From: Octopus sinensis
Taxonomy: Eukaryota
Assembly (NCBI RefSeq): GCF_006345805.1
Contig: NW_021835960.1
Location: 62,001-126,000 of the forward strand
Length of the DNA: 64,000 bases
Direction of reading: 5' to 3'
Made by a program: the position numbers and the translations under genes
Shown here: positions 12,640 to 61,192 of the stretch, piece by piece
Layout of the letters: each line of letters begins with the position of its first letter
How positions within the stretch are numbered: the first letter of the stretch is position 1
The notes under the pieces: model-generated
What the model saw: the letters and a program-made list of their open reading frames with translations, nothing else
Database searches by the model: none
Told to the model about the DNA's origin: nothing

Positions 12640-13790
12640 GTAGTAGTAGTAGTAGTTGTGTGAGGCTGAAAAAACAACTGCATTAGGGATATTGTTCATT
12701 GTAGTAATAAAGGAATAGTAGGGGATATTATGATGGCGTTGATGGTGGTGGTGGTGGTAGTGATGGTGTTGATGAGTCAGCCTTGTGTTAATACTCTGTT
12801 GTGTTGATGATGATGATGAGGATGAGGATGATGATGATGATGAGTCAGCGTTGGTAATGCTGCGTACTGTGGTTGATGATGATGGTTGTGATGTTTATGA
12901 TGGTGTTGATAATGATGGTGTTGATGATGATGATGGTTGATGATGATGATGATGAATCAAGTTTGGTAATGTTGTGTGCTGTTGTTGTTGATGATGACAG
13001 TGGTGATGATGATGATGATGATGATGAATCAACTTCGATGATGTGTGCTGTTGTTGTTGATGATGACGATGGTGTTGGTCATGATGATGACGATGGTGTT
13101 GGTCATGATGATGACGATGGTGTTGGTCATGATGATGACGATGACGATGATGATGATGATGATGGTGGTGGCGGTGTTGGTTGTGAGGATAGTGATGATT
13201 GTGATTATGATGATGATGATGACAATGATGGTTGTGCAGATAGTGCTGATGATGATGATGATGATGGCAAGAATGGTGTTATTGATGATGATGATGATGA
13301 TGATGATGATGACGACGACAATGTCGGTTATGAAGATAGTGATGATGAGGGGTCATTCAGTTCTGTTTCTTGCAAAAGGAAAACGTATGGGATTTATTTA
13401 TTCATTTACTTTATTTGGGGTTTTTTTTTTTTGGGGGGGGGGGTTTGTTTGTTTTTTGTTTGCATTTTGTATTACTTACTCATTCATTCATTCATTTATT
13501 TATTTATTTATTTATTTTGCGGAAAAAAGCAACTGTTGCTTGATATGTTGTTGTTGTTGTTACTGTTGTTACTTGAGATGGCGGCAGTTGTTGGACTTGT
13601 TCCTGCTGCTGCTGCTACTGCTGTTGTTGTTGCTGCTGCTGCTGCAGTTGCTGCTGCAGTTGTTGCTGCTGCAGTTGTTGCTGCTGCAGTTGTTGTTGTT
13701 GTTTGTGATTGGATGACATTGTTGCAACGATGCTGGCTGTGTTGTTGTTGATAACTGCAATCCTTTTATTGATTTGAGTGGCCCTGTTGT
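12640..13790. repeat. Compound trinucleotide microsatellite, (GAT)n/(GTT)n/(GCT)n
   Basis: Direct inspection; includes three copies of the 24-bp unit ggtgttggtcatgatgatgacgat. Confidence 0.95.
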
Positions 13791-13941
13791 TGTTCTTGTT
13801 GCCTATTGGGATAGGTAGGTGCTAAGTGGCATTAGCAGTGGAGGGGGGGGGGGGGTTAGCAGCCTGGCTGTGGCTTACATGTTGATAGAAACTTCTCTCT
13901 CACTCTCTTTCTAACCCTTTACTCTCTCTCTCTCTCTCTCT

Positions 13942-14969
13942 TTGTCCCTCTCTCCCTCTCTCTACTACTCAGTCTACTCCCTCCCTTCCTCCTTCCTCTC
14001 TCTCTACTACTCATTCTACTCCCTCCCTTCCTCCTTCCTCTCTCTCTACTACTCATTCTACACCCTCCCTTCCTCCTTCCTCTCTCTCGATTACTCATTC
14101 TACTCCTCCTTCCTCCTTCCTCTCTCTCTACTACTCATTCTACCCTCCCCTTCCTCCTTCCTCTCTCTCTACAACTCATTCTACTCCCTCCCTTCCTCCT
14201 TCCTCTCTCTCTACTACTCATTTTACTCCCTCCCTTCCTCCTGCCTTTCTCTCTACTACTCAGTCTACACCCTCCCTTCTTCCTTCCTCTCTCTCTACTA
14301 CTCATTCTACTCCCTTCCTCTTTCCTCTCTCTTTCTCTACTACTCATTCTACTCCCTCCCTTCATCTCTCTCTATTACTCATTCTACTCCCCTTCCACCA
14401 TCCTCTCTACTACTCATTTTACTCCCTCCCTTCCTCCTGCCTTTCTCTCTACTACTCAGTCTACTCCCTCCCTTCCTCCTTCTCTCTCTGTTTACTACTC
14501 ATTCTACTCCCTCCCTTCCTCCTTCCTCTCTCTACTACTCATTCTACTCCCTCCCTTCCTCCTTCCTCTCTCTCTACTACTCATTCTACACCCTCCCTTC
14601 CTCCTTCCTCTCTCTCTCTCTCTACAACTCATTCTACACCCTCCCTTCCTCCTTCCTCTCTCTCTACTACTCAGTCTACACCCTCCCTTCTTCCTTCCTC
14701 TCTCTCTACTACTCATTCTACTCCCTTCCTCTTTCCTCTCTCTTTCTCTACTACTCATTCTACTCCCTCCCTTCATATCTCTCTACTCATTCTACTCCCC
14801 TTCTACCATCCTCTCTGCTACTCATTTTACTCCCTCCCTTCCTCCTGCCTTTCTCTCTACTACTCAGTCTACTCCCTCCCTTCCTCCTTCTCTCTCTGTT
14901 TACTACTCATTCTACTCCCTCCCTTCCTCCTTCCTCTCTCTACTACTCATTCTACTCCCTCCCTTCCTC
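13942..14969. repeat. Pyrimidine-rich minisatellite (unit about 36-40 bp) with higher-order duplication
   Basis: Unit ctctctctactactcattctactccctcccttcctccttc; the run of variant units at about 14250-14560 recurs at about 14665-14969. Confidence 0.95.
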
Positions 14970-15185
14970 AGAAAAAAAACAAAAAAAACAAAACAAATTG
15001 GTATTAGTTGCATAAATAATAGAAATGATAGTGGTGAATGTGGTGAAGCTGTGGCATTAATGCTGTGTTTATATGGTGGTGGTGACAACTGCAGTGGTGG
15101 TGTGGAATTAATGGTGTATGAATGTGATAGTTCTGTGGTGGTATCAATAATTACATGTATGTATGTATGTATGTATGTATGTATA

Positions 15186-37075: not shown

Positions 37076-38291
37076 TATATGTGTGTGTGTGTGTAGATAA
37101 ATTTTGAGTTAGAGATTATGCAACCATCTAGGGGATAAATGTATCCGTAGTCACTACTGGTGTATTACCTCACTATGTATAGGCCTTGTAATGACAGGTT
37201 AACAGTAGTTAGTAATTTAAATGGTAAACCGTAGTTTAACATACTCAGATAAGAAAAGAAATGGAGCAACAATTAACAATTAGAAGTTGATCATTGGTAT
37301 TAAAAGGTCATAGATTAATTGTAGTTAAAAAACATTTACTACTGTTTCAGTTTGTTATTTTTGAAGTGAATTTGGGATTCGAACTCACAACATCACAGTC
37401 GTAAGTTCGATGCTCTAACCACTAAGCCATGAAATAAAGTACACAAAAATATAAAACTATCACAAGAGAGAGCTAATGAAATTATTCATGCATAAGTCCT
37501 GATTTATCTAAAATTAATTGCCTGTTAGCAACATAAAGTCTTGAGAGTTTTGGGTTTGTGTGTGTAAATATATGTAAATATATATATATTTATATATGTA
37601 CATATGTGTAAATGTGTGTGTGTGTGTGTAAGTCATTGAAATGATTTTTTAAAAATAAGATTGTATGATTATTTTTTAAAAGTATTAAACTCAAATTTAT
37701 TGATAAAATGTATAATATATTTTTTAAAATTTTTACATCTACATTATACTTTGATCTTTTGGATTACTTATTGTAATCAAGCGTTTTGTTCCTCGCAGTG
37801 ATATATTCACAGACTGGATTCAAATATAAAGATTTATTTATAAAATGCAATACCGTACTTTCCCACATATACATACTCCTGTGACCTACTGGAGAAGAGT
37901 ATGATTATCTTTGGTTTGCAAATAAAGGTTCCAAGTTTAAATCCAGTCTGGGACTATGTATACAACTAGTAATAAAGCACATGATAATGATTAGTTATCA
38001 AACTGCTCAAAGCTTAAATGTAAATATCAAATGTTTTTCATTTCCAAAGATGATATTAATAGTCTATGAAAATACAGTCTTATTTATCTTGTCTGTGTTA
38101 TGGCCGTAAAACCAAAAATACGTAACAACCTTTATGTGTGCTTTATGATTTTGTTAATATTTATTTCATGCTTTCAGACTTTGGTGATATTTATTTTTAA
38201 AAATGTAAAGTAAATATTGATTTTTATATATTAGCATAATTTAATAATTTATTTCAAATGCTAATTTACTTTATTATTCTATTATAGGAAA

Positions 38292-38498
38292 ATGGGTATT
38301 GCAAATGACCTCCAAGGGAGGTCATCACATGAGGCCCTCATTCGCCTCTTGGATGAAGAACTTAGCCTTATGGAGACCATGAAAAAGTGTATGGCCATTC
38401 GAGTTGAAGGTGACCGGAAATATGTAGATATGCTCTCTAACTTTCTACAAGCTGCTCAGAAAATTGGAACAGTGGAATTTCAAACATCAATATATCGA
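38292..38498 (+). CDS. FER: Fer/Fes tyrosine kinase, coding exon 1 (F-BAR/FCH N-terminus)
   Basis: MGIANDLQGRSSHEALIRLLDEELSLMETMKKCMAIRVEGDRKYVDMLSNFL aligns without gaps to the recalled vertebrate FER N-terminus ([40 protein letters not shown]). Acceptor ttctattatag ends at 38287; donor CGA|gtaagt at 38499; 207 nt, phase 0. Confidence 0.95.
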
Positions 38499-48674: not shown

Positions 48675-48746
<72 letters not shown>

Positions 48747-51625: not shown

Positions 51626-51799
51626 GCATGGAACTGTATTATTGAAGAAACAGAAAAACTTGTAAATCATGTCCGAAAAAATGTCGATGAACTCAGCTCA
51701 AAAACATTAAAAGCTTTGGGAAATTTGATACTCGAGAAGAAATCAGCTAAGAAGTCTTACATAGAAGAAAGGATCTATCTTGATGAAGAATTACTGAAG
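51626..51799 (+). CDS. FER: Fer/Fes kinase, coding exon 2 (F-BAR)
   Basis: ttatatttccag|GCA TGG ... CTG AAG|gtaaat. Encodes AWNCIIEETEKLVNHVRKNVDELSSKTLKALGNLILEKKSAKKSYIEERIYLDEELLK, which resembles FER [23 protein letters not shown]...KKSY...EAEMIK. 174 nt, phase 0/0. Confidence 0.93.
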
Positions 51800-57663: not shown

Positions 57664-57760
57664 ATCCAAGATGATGTGAACAAACAGGAAAATGACTACA
57701 CAAGAGTACTTGATAAGTTCAAAGTTGACAAAGCCAGATACGATGATTTATGTGCAAAAG
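57664..57760 (+). CDS. FER: Fer/Fes kinase, coding exon 3 (F-BAR)
   Basis: Long pyrimidine tract, tag|ATC CAA ... GCA AAA G|gtaagt. Encodes IQDDVNKQENDYTRVLDKFKVDKARYDDLCAK plus one G. 97 nt, phase 0/1. Confidence 0.88.
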
Positions 57761-57859
57761 GTAAGTTTAATTTCTTTTGTTATGTATGCTTGATGTTTTC
57801 CCTTAATGAAACTACAGACAAAATCATTGAAATTATAAAAATATTTCTTCTAGCCTTAA

Positions 57860-58080
57860 CCCTTTTGTTACCAACCCGGCTGAAACCAGCTCAGGCTCTT
57901 TAATACAGATGTCTTGTTTTCATGAGTTTTGAATTAAAATCTTCCACCAAACCTTAGTCACAATTTATGTTCCTAACACTAGCTGAATGATAAATAAGTT
58001 ACTTTACTAAATTCTTTGTTATATTTAAAGTAACTGAAAGAAACACAGAGCATCTCAAAATAAATACAGTAACAAAAGGA
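57860..58080. mobile_element. piggyBac-like MITE with TTAA TSD
   Basis: TTAA|CCCTTTTGTTAC ... GTAACAAAAGGA|TTAA. Confidence 0.85.
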
Positions 58081-58639
58081 TTAATTACTAAGTATCCTTT
58101 TATGTAGTTAGGTTGGTTGGTTGGTTGGTTGGTTGGTTGGTTACTAAGGGGTAAATGACAAAACGTTGGTAACAATGTAATAAAGTCTCTTAACTTACGT
58201 TCAGTCTGCTTGTGGATGAGAGGCCTGTTGATAACAACAGATGATTTAGAGAAATCTACACTTTTTATGACATACATATGTGTTATTTGCAGCACCTACT
58301 TTGACACTATAATAACAAATTTATATGCATCCGTTCAGGGTTTTTTTATTATTATTTTAAACGTAACTTAGCCAGAGGAAGAAGGATGGCCCTATCCTAA
58401 TGTCTTTTCAAAAACTCTGAGACTGCTGGGAGGAAGGAAGAGAGGAAAGGAAGAAGTTGTCTCAGATAAGACACCTGGTTGAAATTTTTTCAACTGTATG
58501 CTTCATGGAAAGGTTTCATGAGCTAGATAGAAGTTTTGATGAAGACCTTCGACATGGTTGAACAACCAATCCCAACTAGTTGGGATTCACAGTGCAGGTT
58601 GTACTATTCATCCTTTCAGTTGCTAAATACAAAATGTGG

Positions 58640-58855
58640 CTTGCAAGGCCTCCACTCAAGTGATTTTTCCTGCATTACTGTCTCACCTTAGTATGCCAAT
58701 CTGTCACAAAGTTACCCATTTTCAGGTGAGTGGACAGGAGCAATGTGAAGTAAGGTGTTTTATGCAAGAACATAATGTATAGCTGGTCTGGGAACCAAAA
58801 CCAAGATCTCGTGACTGTGAGTGCAACACCTTGGCCATTAGGCCACGTGTCTTCA
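58640..58855 (-). mobile_element. SINE family C, degraded
   Basis: tgagtggacaggagcaatgtgaag..ccattaggccacgtg matches the reverse family C core and head. Confidence 0.65.
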
Positions 58856-59059
58856 TAAGTTTTAAACTAGATGACAAATTAAATCTACCAATGAAAAAGA
58901 GGGAAATCCTTCTGATGAGGTTTCCACACCATTTCCATCTGCTAAATTTCACTTAGAAGGTTTTGATGAATACAAGGTTATGGTAGAAGATATTTGCCCA
59001 AAGTACCGTACAGAAGGATTGAATCAGAAACCATGTAATTGGAAGCAACTATGCCTTGC

Positions 59060-59433
59060 CTCATCATCATCATCATCACCATCATCGTTTAACTTCCGTT
59101 TTCCATGCTGGCATGGGTTGGACGGTTCAACTGGGGTCTGGGAAGCCAGGAGGCTGCACCAGGCTCCAATCTGATCTGGCAGTGTTTCTACAGCTGGATG
59201 CCCTTCCTAACGCCAACCACTACGAGAGTGTAGTGGGCGCTTTTTACATGCCACTGGCATAGGGGCCAGAGGTGGCTGGCATTGACCACATTTGGATGGT
59301 ACTTTTACATGCCTCCGGCACAGGAGCCAGATGGGGCTGGCATCGACCACGTTTGGATGGTGCTTTTACATGCCACCAGCACAGGAGCCAGTCAAGGCGG
59401 TGCTGGCATCAGCCACGTTTGGATGGTGCTTTT
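59060..59433 (-). mobile_element. RTE 3' UTR fragment with internal imperfect repeats of about 60 bp
   Basis: ggatgcccttcctaacgccaacc; gcatcgaccacgtttggatggtgctttt occurs three times. Confidence 0.85.
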
Positions 59434-59679
59434 TGGTGGGGAGTAGGAGAGGGATGGTTATTTTCCCCATCTTCACAGATGTGCTCAAATCTCATCAAGA
59501 TTTCTGTTGTTTCTAGTCTTGCTGATGGCACGACAACCTCCATAGTACAGGTAACACAATAAAATGCATCCAGAAAACCCTGTAAAGTGTTTGGTGTTAG
59601 AAAGAGCATCGAGCTATAGAATCCGTATGCAAGCAAAATGTAGTCCTCTGACTCTATTAGATGGGCAGTAACTTCAAAT

Positions 59680-59912
59680 AAGGCGACGAGCTAGCAGAAA
59701 CGTTAGCACAATGGGCGAAATGTTTAGTGGTATTTCATCTGTCTTTACGTTCTGAGTTCAAATTCCGCTGAGGTCGACTTTGACTTTCATCCTTTCAGGG
59801 TCGATTAGATAAGTACCAGTTATGCACTGGGGTCGATATAATCGACTTAATCCGTTTGTCTGTCCTTGTTTGTCCTCTCTGTGTAGCCCCTTGTGGGCAG
59901 TAAAGAAATAAG
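59680..59912 (+). mobile_element. SINE family B, full length
   Basis: Near-identical to 21133-21367. Confidence 0.9.
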
Positions 59913-60099
59913 TAACTCCAAATAACTGACTCAGATTGTGACAACCTGCCTAAATCATACCAGTTTGAAAAATGTGCGTAAGCATGGTGGTGGTGGTGGT
60001 GGCGGTGGCAGGTAGATATATTCAACTTAACAAATTTACTACATAGTTACTGAATATATTTTGAAATGAACCAGCATATTTAAATTCTAGCATCTTTTA

Positions 60100-60920
60100 T
60101 CTTTTACTTCATTTAACTACGACCATGCTAGGGCACTACCTTGAATAATTTCTAGTTTAATGAATTGACTCCAATACTTATTATTTTTTTTTTAGACCTG
60201 GTACTTATTCAACTGGTCTCTTTTACTGAACTGCTAAGTTACGAGGACATAAACACACCAACACCTGTTGCCCAGTGGTGCAGGGTGACAAAGACAAAGA
60301 CAAAGACACGCTTGCACACACGCATATATCTGTATATACAATGAGCATCTTTCAGTTTCTCTACCAAATGCACTCACAAGATTTTGGCCAGCCTGAGGCT
60401 ATATTGAAAGATACTTGCCCAAGGTGCCATGCAATGGGAGTGAACTCAAAGCCATGTGGCTGGGAAGGAAACTTCTTACCACACAGCCATGTCTGCACAT
60501 ACTCTTTACTTGTTTCAGTCTTTTGACTGCGGCCGTGCTGGAGCACCGCCTTTTTTAGTTGAGCAAATCGACCCCAGGACTTATTCTTTGGAAGCCTAGT
60601 ACTTATTCTATCGGTCGATTTTGCCAAACCGCTAAGTTACGGGGAAGTAAACTTACCAACATCAGTTGTCAAGTGATTTTGGGGGAACAAACACAGAGAC
60701 ACAAACACATACATACATACACACGCACACACACACACACACCCATATATATATACTTATATACAACGGGCTTCTTTCAGTTTCCGTCTACCAAATCCAC
60801 TCACAAGGCTTTGGTCGGCCGGAGGCTATAGTAGGAGACACTTCCCCAAGGTGCCACGCAGTGGGACTGAACCCGGAACCATGTGATTCGTAAGCAAGCA
60901 ATTTGCCACACAGCCACTCT
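60100..60920 (-). mobile_element. Two tandem SINE family A copies (60100-60498, 60501-60920)
   Basis: Sequence similarity. Confidence 0.88.
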
Positions 60921-61004
60921 TACACCAACTTTAATTCAATTTTTTTTTTTTAAATATCTAAATTTTTAATTTAATTTCTTAACTCCACTCCTCTTTGTTT
61001 ACAG

Positions 61005-61192
61005 GAAAATAAAAAAATTGAAGATGCTAAGTCGCACTACCTTCGAACAACATCCAAACTGCACAAACTACACAATGAATATATCATTGCAATTAAAGTA
61101 GCTTCATTACACCAGAACGATTATCTTGTCAAACTTCTCCCTTCATTTCTGACACACCATGAAGAAACACACATTGGTCTCACCGAAGGATG
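61005..61192 (+). CDS. FER: Fer/Fes kinase, coding exon 4 (F-BAR); 5' boundary or phase uncertain
   Basis: ctctttgtttacag|GAA AAT ... GGA TG|gtaaga. Encodes ENKKIEDAKSHYLRTTSKLHKLHNEYIIAIKVASLHQNDYLVKLLPSFLTHHEETHIGLTEG, matching FER [23 protein letters not shown]...LHQNQY...LP. Translated by hand; absent from the ORF track. Confidence 0.9.

What the first reader, a model, noticed from the sequence alone, without database searches (positions are those of the whole stretch)
57664..61192. Fer exon 3 to exon 4 reading-frame mismatch: assembly indel, microexon or unusual acceptor
Seen: exon 3 ends AAA G|gtaagt (phase 1). The only strong acceptor (tttacag, 61004) opens the FER-homologous frame in phase 0 (GAA AAT AAA AAA ATT GAA GAT). 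Direct splicing gives GGA AAA TAA, truncating the F-BAR domain, yet downstream exon 4 is intact and conserved. Inferred explanations: (a) one extra A in the A4 run at 61006-61009, giving G-N-K-K-I; this is the simplest; (b) an unseen 3n+2 nt microexon; the best candidates I saw are weak and repeat-derived (tag|TACAG|gtaaca 59546-59550; cag|AT|gtgctc 59479-59480); (c) a weak aag acceptor at 61023; (d) speculative: A-to-I editing of A61008 creates an AG. Exon 4 would then start at 61009 and be 184 nt, the vertebrate length as I recall it, reading D-K-K-I-E-D-A-K against G-K-E-T-E-K-A-K without a gap. Editing-created acceptors are known (ADAR2 auto-editing), and coleoid cephalopods edit heavily.
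Basis: partly seen in the sequence, partly recalled or inferred. Interest (0 to 1): 0.7.

Follow-up and report, generated by a model that had tools for sequence, protein, structure and literature searches.

The report
Fer frameshift is an assembly error
The broken reading frame between two exons of the octopus Fer kinase gene comes from two adenines missing in this copy of the sequence, which lies on a redundant, error-rich scaffold, so it is almost certainly an assembly artefact and not unusual splicing or RNA editing.

Summary
Exon 3 (57664-57760) ends in phase 1. The only good acceptor (cag, 61002-61004) opens the Fer frame in phase 0. Direct splicing reads GGA AAA TAA.

The cause is ordinary. 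The window is Octopus sinensis scaffold C12431 (179 kb), which aligns end to end inside scaffold C8903 (768 kb) of the same assembly, so it is an uncollapsed haplotig. The sister copy and the Illumina-polished O. vulgaris genome both read cag|GAAAAATAAAAAAAATTG (A5-T-A8, exon of 190 nt). The window reads A4-T-A7 (188 nt), one A short in each run.

With 190 nt the same donor and acceptor join in frame: AK-GKIKKIED-AK. This matches the O. bimaculoides proteins, Argonauta (GKVKKIED, 190 nt, intron only 289 nt) and squid-type mRNA contigs.

The two scaffolds differ by about as many indels (231) as substitutions (234), mostly 1-bp run-length changes. That is a long-read consensus-error pattern.

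The microexon, the aag acceptor and the editing-made acceptor are all contradicted by the orthologues. RefSeq models on this scaffold start at an out-of-frame ATG (57692) because of the error. A real heterozygous null allele cannot be excluded without reads (about 5-10%).

The parts
38292..38498 (+). Fer coding exon 1 (ATG at 38292; 207 nt, ends phase 0, CGA|gtaagt)
   Evidence: tblastn with human FER. Boundaries read. Identical to the N-terminus of P0002/P0013.
51626..51799 (+). Fer coding exon 2 (174 nt, phase 0 to 0)
57664..57760 (+). Fer coding exon 3 (97 nt, phase 0 to 1; ends GCA AAA G)
   Evidence: Identical in C8903 and O. vulgaris, and also 97 nt in Argonauta.
57692..57694 (+). Out-of-frame ATG inside exon 3. 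The RefSeq models on this scaffold use it as their start codon to get round the frameshift (MTTQEYLISSKLTKPDTMIYVQK|ENKKIED...).
   Evidence: Translating 57692-57760 + 61005-61192 reproduces the N-termini of P0009-P0012 and P0016 exactly.
57761..61004 (+). Intron 3 (3244 nt): canonical gtaagt donor, polypyrimidine tract and cag acceptor. It contains a high-copy dispersed repeat at about 60780-60925.
   Evidence: Donor and acceptor are conserved in C8903, O. vulgaris and Argonauta.
61005..61192 (+). Fer coding exon 4 as assembled here: 188 nt. It is 190 nt in the sister scaffold, O. vulgaris and Argonauta (phase 1 to 2).
61006..61009 (+). A4 run, which is A5 in the sister scaffold C8903 and in O. 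vulgaris (first missing A)
61011..61017 (+). A7 run, which is A8 in the sister scaffold C8903 and in O. vulgaris (second missing A)

Best explanation
The window lies on a redundant alternative-haplotype scaffold (haplotig) of the PacBio-based Octopus sinensis assembly. In Fer coding exon 4 the consensus is one A short in each of two adjacent homopolymers: A5-T-A8 was written as A4-T-A7. With the 190-nt exon the phase-1 junction reads G|GA AAA ATA AAA AAA ATT GAA GAT, giving AKGKIKKIEDAK and an intact F-BAR domain. No microexon, alternative acceptor or RNA editing is involved.

Shown: the 2-nt shortfall, the in-frame sister copy, the in-frame orthologues, the haplotig status, and the indel excess across the scaffold.

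Inferred: that the shortfall is a consensus error and not a true allele.
For: 1. Identity of the assembly. G000 has 2,719,151,902 bp in 13,516 scaffolds. These are the published figures for the O. sinensis PacBio+Hi-C assembly of Li et al. 2020 (PMC10700109 Table 1). In that table 14% of its bases are outside chromosome-scale scaffolds, and duplicated BUSCOs are 5.2% against 0.4-0.5% in O. vulgaris and O. bimaculoides.

2. Haplotig status. Exon 4 occurs exactly twice in the genome, on C12431 (the window) and on C8903. The whole of C12431 (179,357 bp) aligns collinearly with C8903:176,978-357,780 at 98-99.5% identity.

3. The difference itself. C8903 reads cag|GAAAAATAAAAAAAATTG. Within the exon and its splice sites the only difference from the window is the two As.

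4. Independent assemblies. O. vulgaris (ONT assembly polished with Illumina reads and run through purge_dups) has the identical A5-T-A8. Argonauta hians has GGAAAGTGAAGAAAATTG. All three exons are 190 nt and splice in frame from a 97-nt exon 3.

5. Proteins and mRNAs. The O. bimaculoides and O. vulgaris proteins read GKIKKIED. Squid-type mRNA contigs from four RNA-seq runs read GKMNKKLED or GKLNKKLED without interruption.

6. Error signature.
- Window versus C8903: 234 substitutions against 231 indel events, 144 of them 1 bp.
- At the left end of C12431: 3 substitutions against 15 indels.
- Three of 9 runs of length 8 and 9 of 232 runs of length 5 differ between the scaffolds.
- Polarised with O. 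vulgaris, the ratio of 1-bp indels to substitutions is 0.046 on the species branch. It is 0.15 and 0.34 on the two scaffolds' private branches.
- Private indels include single bases stuck inside CA/TA/TG dinucleotide repeats.

7. Same protein downstream. The models from the two scaffolds are identical over the last 800 residues, so this is not a decaying paralogue.
Against: - No reads could be examined, so a genuine A4-T-A7 allele on one haplotype is not excluded.
- The two scaffolds are real, distinct haplotypes: 41-50 private substitutions each against O. vulgaris over 26 kb. Some of their indel differences must therefore be real.
- Two separate 1-bp changes within 10 nt is a coincidence under either model, roughly 0.33 x 0.04 from the run-length census if independent. 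The error model needs correlated consensus failure in a 14-nt A-rich stretch. That is plausible but was not shown here.
- The rest of the coding sequence carries no other frameshift. This is fewer than the non-coding indel density would predict.
Confidence: 0.9

Rival explanations
1. Real heterozygous frameshift allele. The sequenced octopus truly carries A4-T-A7 on one haplotype, a Fer null or hypomorphic allele whose transcripts are truncated or degraded. The other haplotype (C8903) supplies functional Fer.
For: C12431 and C8903 are genuinely different haplotypes: balanced private substitutions against O. vulgaris, plus private structural differences such as a (TC)25 insertion and 5-21-nt indels. 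Long A-runs are natural slippage hot spots.
Against: - It needs two independent 1-bp deletions 6 nt apart on one haplotype. No single contiguous deletion converts A5-T-A8 to A4-T-A7.
- The assembly-wide 1-bp indel excess (3-7 times the interspecies ratio, and an indel:substitution ratio near 1) means most such differences are errors.
- The gene is otherwise identical at protein level over 800 residues and is highly conserved across coleoids.
- A loss-of-function allele in any one given gene is rare a priori.
Confidence: 0.07
2. The genomic sequence is correct and the frame is restored at the RNA level. The candidate mechanisms are a 3n+2 microexon in intron 3, use of the weak aag acceptor at 61023, or A-to-I editing of A61008 creating an AG acceptor so that exon 4 starts at 61009.
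For: The aag|AT acceptor at 61022-61023 does restore the frame. The microexon candidates exist as sequence. Coleoids edit RNA heavily, and editing-made acceptors are known from ADAR2 pre-mRNA (general knowledge, not tested here).
Against: - An in-frame copy using the canonical acceptor exists in the same genome and in O. vulgaris, so nothing needs rescuing.
- All octopod proteins and squid-type mRNAs contain the residues G-K-(I/V/M/L) that these mechanisms would remove. The K-G-K motif is conserved out to the gastropod Pomacea.
- Argonauta intron 3 is 289 nt and has no counterpart of the repeat-derived microexon candidates.
- RefSeq models on this scaffold join 57760 directly to 61005.
Confidence: 0.01
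3. C12431 carries a recently duplicated Fer paralogue that is starting to decay into a pseudogene, and is not an allelic haplotig.
For: The assembly holds two copies, and NCBI annotated them as two genes.
Against: - The whole 179-kb scaffold, not only the gene, is nested collinearly in C8903 at 98-99.5% identity.
- Its divergence from C8903 is symmetrical with respect to O. vulgaris and within the heterozygosity range.
- The look-ups returned one contig each for the O. vulgaris and O. bimaculoides Fer proteins.
- The proteins are identical over 800 residues.
- The assembly has ten-fold more duplicated BUSCOs than purged octopus assemblies.
Confidence: 0.02

Closest known systems
Homopolymer-length consensus errors in long-read (PacBio CLR / ONT) assemblies that create apparent frameshifts
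   Same: Both differences are -1 in A-runs (A5->A4, A8->A7). The surrounding scaffold shows an indel:substitution ratio near 1, run-length differences that rise with run length, and stray single bases inside dinucleotide repeats. Independent polished assemblies carry the in-frame lengths.
   Different: Nothing in the sequence departs from this pattern. The read-level proof is the only thing missing.
Haplotypic duplication (uncollapsed haplotigs) in primary assemblies of heterozygous genomes, the problem purge_dups addresses
   Same: A 179-kb scaffold lies nested end to end in a 768-kb scaffold at 98-99.5% identity. Both are outside the chromosome-scale scaffolds. The assembly has 5.2% duplicated BUSCOs.
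   Different: Read depth, the usual criterion, could not be checked.
Editing-created 3' splice site (ADAR2/ADARB1 auto-editing, AA->AI)
   Same: Only a formal resemblance: an AA dinucleotide (61007-61008) a few nucleotides into the exon would give an in-frame acceptor if read as AG.
   Different: The frame problem it was meant to solve does not exist in the sister haplotype or in related species. The residues upstream of the proposed site are conserved in proteins and mRNAs. No editing data or dsRNA partner was examined.
FER/FES (Fps) family of F-BAR-SH2 non-receptor tyrosine kinases
   Same: The gene is the octopus Fer orthologue. Full-length models from the sister scaffold and from O. bimaculoides carry FCH (PF00611), SH2 (PF00017) and tyrosine-kinase (PF07714) domains. 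Exons 1, 2 and 4 match human FER by tblastn.
   Different: Molluscan proteins have 2-3 more residues than vertebrate FER between the two conserved A-K dipeptides at this junction.

Membership tests
Assembly artefact: homopolymer indel on an uncollapsed haplotig | A second, collinear copy of the whole scaffold exists in the same assembly | tested here: met
   C12431:1-179357 aligns to C8903:176978-357780. The window aligns to C8903 at about 239169-303996 with 97.8-99.3% identity.
Assembly artefact: homopolymer indel on an uncollapsed haplotig | The frame-breaking difference is confined to homopolymer length | tested here: met
   A4-T-A7 against A5-T-A8. The exon and its splice sites are otherwise identical.
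Assembly artefact: homopolymer indel on an uncollapsed haplotig | Independent assemblies or species and transcripts support the in-frame length | tested here: met
   O. vulgaris has an identical 190-nt exon and Argonauta a 190-nt exon. O. bimaculoides proteins read GKIKKIED. Squid-type mRNA contigs are in frame.
Assembly artefact: homopolymer indel on an uncollapsed haplotig | The scaffold shows a general excess of small indels over substitutions | tested here: met
   231 indel events against 234 substitutions over 64 kb, and 15 against 3 at the left end. The private 1-bp-indel:substitution ratio is 0.15-0.34 against 0.046 on the O. vulgaris branch.
Assembly artefact: homopolymer indel on an uncollapsed haplotig | Accurate reads from the same individual show the longer runs only | not testable with these tools
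   No read data are reachable. Records of the window's own genome are withheld from the look-up tools.
Microexon between exons 3 and 4 | Orthologous mRNAs or proteins contain extra residues at the junction, and a conserved small exon lies in the intron | tested here: not met
   A direct exon 3-exon 4 join is in frame in C8903, O. vulgaris and Argonauta. The Argonauta intron is 289 nt.
Alternative aag acceptor at 61023 | The mature protein lacks the residues encoded by 61005-61023 | tested here: not met
   GK(I/V)KKIED or GK(M/L)NKKLED is present in all coleoid proteins and mRNAs.
Editing-created 3' splice site (ADAR2-type) | The exon begins just after an edited AA, so the mature mRNA lacks the sequence upstream of it | tested here: not met
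   The G-K-I residues upstream of 61009 are conserved, and the canonical acceptor is in frame in the sister copy. Editing itself was not measurable.
FER/FES F-BAR tyrosine kinase | N-terminal FCH/F-BAR, central SH2 and C-terminal tyrosine-kinase domains | tested here: met
   Precomputed Pfam hits PF00611, PF00017 and PF07714 on P0002-P0004. The truncated models from this scaffold (P0009-P0011) lack PF00611.

The most novel reading that the evidence does not exclude
The A4-T-A7 sequence is a genuine allele. The sequenced Octopus sinensis would then be heterozygous for a double-slippage frameshift in the F-BAR region of Fer, tolerated in one copy or partly rescued by the in-frame aag acceptor at 61023, which would delete GKIKKIE.
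Probability: 0.07. Interest if true: 0.2.

Novelty: not a real feature. Interest (0 to 1): 0.05.

Why it matters
The biological significance is small. Octopus Fer has an ordinary phase-1 GT-AG junction here, and nothing points to recoding, editing-dependent splicing or a microexon.

The practical significance is modest.

- The error has spread into public databases. There are at least five N-terminally truncated, partly out-of-frame RefSeq proteins: XP_029657363.2 ('HCK-like'), XP_029657365.2, XP_036355998.1 and two further isoforms.
- The haplotig also makes Fer look duplicated in O. sinensis.
- The measured indel excess, about one 1-bp discrepancy per 440 bp between the two scaffolds, is a warning for anyone calling RNA-editing sites, frameshifts or gene duplications on the unplaced scaffolds of this assembly.

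Tried and rejected
1. Protein search with the 221-aa N-terminus, looking for short transcript-derived fragments. It found only a squid-type genomic exon-1 fragment (P0001).

2. An 88-aa junction query, looking for short Logan fragments from octopus RNA-seq or WGS. There were no candidates at all, so no transcript-level or read-level evidence from O. sinensis itself was obtained.

3. Look-up of the O. bimaculoides loci (P0004, P0003) to read their DNA. They are not on record, so O. bimaculoides contributes protein evidence only.

4. A test of whether the window scaffold is simply the worse copy. It is not: polarised by O. vulgaris, C8903 carries at least as many private indels (31 against 19; 12 against 6 one-bp indels in clean columns). 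The argument therefore rests on the assembly-wide error rate, not on this scaffold being uniquely bad.

5. A single-event explanation for A5-T-A8 -> A4-T-A7. None exists: every contiguous 2-nt deletion gives A3-T-A8, A5-T-A6 or A12.

6. Programmed or transcriptional slippage on the A-run. I considered it and dropped it, because the in-frame sister copy removes any need for it.

7. tRNA and Rfam scans of the window found nothing. The long ORFs at 12.8-15.3 kb are tandem repeats with no Pfam match.
Full report
**What is in the window**

- Fer coding exon 1 runs 38292-38498 (207 nt, phase 0).
- Exon 2 runs 51626-51799 (174 nt, phase 0).
- Exon 3 runs 57664-57760 (97 nt) and ends GCA AAA G|gtaagt, in phase 1.
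- Exon 4 follows ctcctctttgtttacag| at 61005 and ends GGA TG|gtaaga at 61192 (188 nt).

The Fer-homologous frame of exon 4 (…ATT GAA GAT GCT AAG TCG CAC TAC…) is in phase 0 from 61005. A direct join therefore reads GGA AAA TAA. Within 40 nt the only other AG that restores the frame is 61022-61023.

**What the orthologues say**

I padded the window-encoded N-terminus to full length and searched with residues 1-221. This returned full-length Fer proteins from O. bimaculoides, O. sinensis and Argonauta hians, two squid-type transcript-derived proteins, and the gastropod Pomacea.

- Every Octopus protein with an intact N-terminus reads …DDLCAK-GKIKKIED-AKSHY….
- Argonauta reads GKVKKIED.
- The squid-type proteins read GKMNKKLED and GKLNKKLED.
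- Pomacea reads GKGGSKVDD.

GKIKKIED back-translates onto the window only if the sequence is G|GA AAA ATA AAA AAA ATT GAA GAT. That is A5-T-A8 where the window has A4-T-A7.

A second set of O. sinensis RefSeq models (P0009-P0012, P0016) begins MTTQEYLISSKLTKPDTMIYVQK-ENKKIED…. Translating window 57692-57760 + 61005-61192 reproduces that N-terminus exactly. So the annotation pipeline met the same frameshift on this very scaffold. It worked round the problem by starting at an out-of-frame ATG inside exon 3, and most of the F-BAR domain was lost. These models lack PF00611, which the full-length ones have.

**Where the window comes from**

The window's genome has 2,719,151,902 bp in 13,516 scaffolds. 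These are the published statistics of the O. sinensis PacBio+Hi-C assembly of Li et al. 2020 (PMC10700109, Table 1).

The window is C12431:62001-126000, and C12431 is 179,357 bp long. Exon 4 occurs exactly twice in the genome. The second copy is on C8903 (768,376 bp) and is 2 nt longer. These two lengths are the contig lengths recorded for the truncated and the full-length RefSeq models respectively.

The window aligns collinearly with C8903 at 97.8-99.3% identity. The first and last 10 kb of C12431 align to C8903:176,978-186,997 and 347,482-357,780. The whole scaffold is therefore nested in the larger one.

The same paper reports, for this assembly, 14% of bases outside chromosome-scale scaffolds and 5.2% duplicated BUSCOs. 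The figure for O. vulgaris and O. bimaculoides is 0.4-0.5%. C12431 is an uncollapsed haplotig.

**The difference itself**

- Over 3.2 kb around exon 4 the two scaffolds differ by one substitution and seven small run-length or microsatellite indels.
- Within the exon and both splice sites the only difference is cag|GAAAA-TAAAAAAA-TTG (window) against cag|GAAAAATAAAAAAAATTG (C8903).
- The O. vulgaris chromosome assembly (ONT, polished with Illumina reads, run through purge_dups) is identical to C8903 here.
- Argonauta hians has gcag|GGAAAGTGAAGAAAATTG, in which the runs are broken by synonymous or conservative changes.
- In all three the exons are 97 and 190 nt, and the direct join is in frame.
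- The Argonauta intron is 289 nt, which leaves neither room nor need for a conserved microexon.
- Squid-type mRNA contigs from three RNA-seq runs read GCG AAA GGT AAG ATG AAT AAG AAA CTC GAA GAC without interruption. A fourth run gives the second squid-type protein.

**Error or allele?**

The scaffolds are true haplotypes. Polarised with O. vulgaris over 26 kb, each carries a similar number of private substitutions: 50 and 44 overall, or 41 and 35 in cleanly aligned columns.

Their indel load, however, is far above what divergence predicts.

- Over the 64-kb window there are 231 indel events against 234 substitutions. Of these, 144 are 1 bp and 106 of those are run-length changes.
- At the left end of C12431 there are 15 indels against 3 substitutions.
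- The ratio of 1-bp indels to substitutions is 0.046 on the O. vulgaris branch. It is 0.15 and 0.34 on the two private branches.
- Private indels include single bases inserted inside CA, TA and TG dinucleotide repeats, and GG->G or CCC->CC changes. These are characteristic of incompletely polished long-read consensus, not of slippage polymorphism.
- A third of the runs of length 8 (3 of 9), 16% of the runs of length 7, and 4% of the runs of length 5 differ between the scaffolds.

The protein models from the two scaffolds are identical over the remaining 800 residues. No single contiguous deletion converts A5-T-A8 into A4-T-A7, so a real allele would need two independent slippage events 6 nt apart in a conserved coding exon.

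Taken together, I put about 0.9 on a consensus error. I put about 0.07 on a real heterozygous frameshift allele, and the small remainder on a paralogue or RNA-level rescue. Only reads can close the gap, and the tools here do not reach any.

**Verdict**

It is wrong in direction, number and resulting peptide.
- The microexon, aag-acceptor and editing-made-acceptor ideas are contradicted by the sister haplotype, three other species and squid-type mRNAs.
- The feature is not biological.
- Its practical residue is a set of truncated, mis-started and mis-named RefSeq Fer models, an apparent Fer duplication in O. sinensis, and a caution about small-indel accuracy on unplaced scaffolds of this assembly.

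Noticed in passing
window 57692-57760 + 61005 onward (C12431): Five RefSeq O. sinensis proteins from this scaffold start at an out-of-frame ATG in exon 3. They are XP_029657363.2 'HCK-like isoform X1', XP_029657365.2, XP_036355998.1 and two further isoforms (P0010, P0011). Their first 23 residues are translated in the wrong frame, and they lack the FCH/F-BAR Pfam hit. They are artefactual duplicates of the full-length gene LOC115229080 on C8903.
   Followed up: yes
whole scaffold C12431 (window = 62001-126000) vs C8903:176978-357780: The 179-kb scaffold is nested end to end in a 768-kb scaffold of the same assembly. Neither lies on a chromosome-scale scaffold, so Fer is both unplaced and apparently duplicated in this assembly.
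   Followed up: yes
positions on C8903 matching window ~42233, 46341, 56214 and 56229: The sister scaffold has single extra bases inside TA, TG and CA dinucleotide repeats (e.g. CACACACAACACAC) that neither the window nor O. vulgaris has. This is a raw long-read error signature, so the in-frame scaffold is no cleaner overall.
   Followed up: partly
window 48679-48728, 45724, 45580, 48880: There are private structural differences in the window haplotype relative to both C8903 and O. vulgaris: a 50-nt (TC)25 insertion, a 21-nt deletion, loss of three ATG repeat units, and a 5-nt GATTA duplication. These look like real haplotype variation rather than consensus error.
   Followed up: no
window 60780-60925 (intron 3, ends ~80 nt before the exon 4 acceptor): This is a high-copy dispersed repeat. 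There were 4803 first-look candidates in the genome, and the 38 best copies elsewhere in the genome were 93-96% identical, spread across many chromosomes. It looks SINE-like. ARAGORN and Rfam do not call it a tRNA.
   Followed up: partly
window 12805-15000: A (TGA)n microsatellite (12805-13312), a (CTG)n tract, and a 42-nt CT-rich minisatellite of about 25 copies (13947-14969) keep all three + frames open for up to 473 codons. These long ORFs are repeat artefacts with no Pfam match.
   Followed up: partly
window 38270-38295: The start codon (38292) lies 4 nt after a good acceptor (ttattctattatag|gaaaATG).
   Followed up: no
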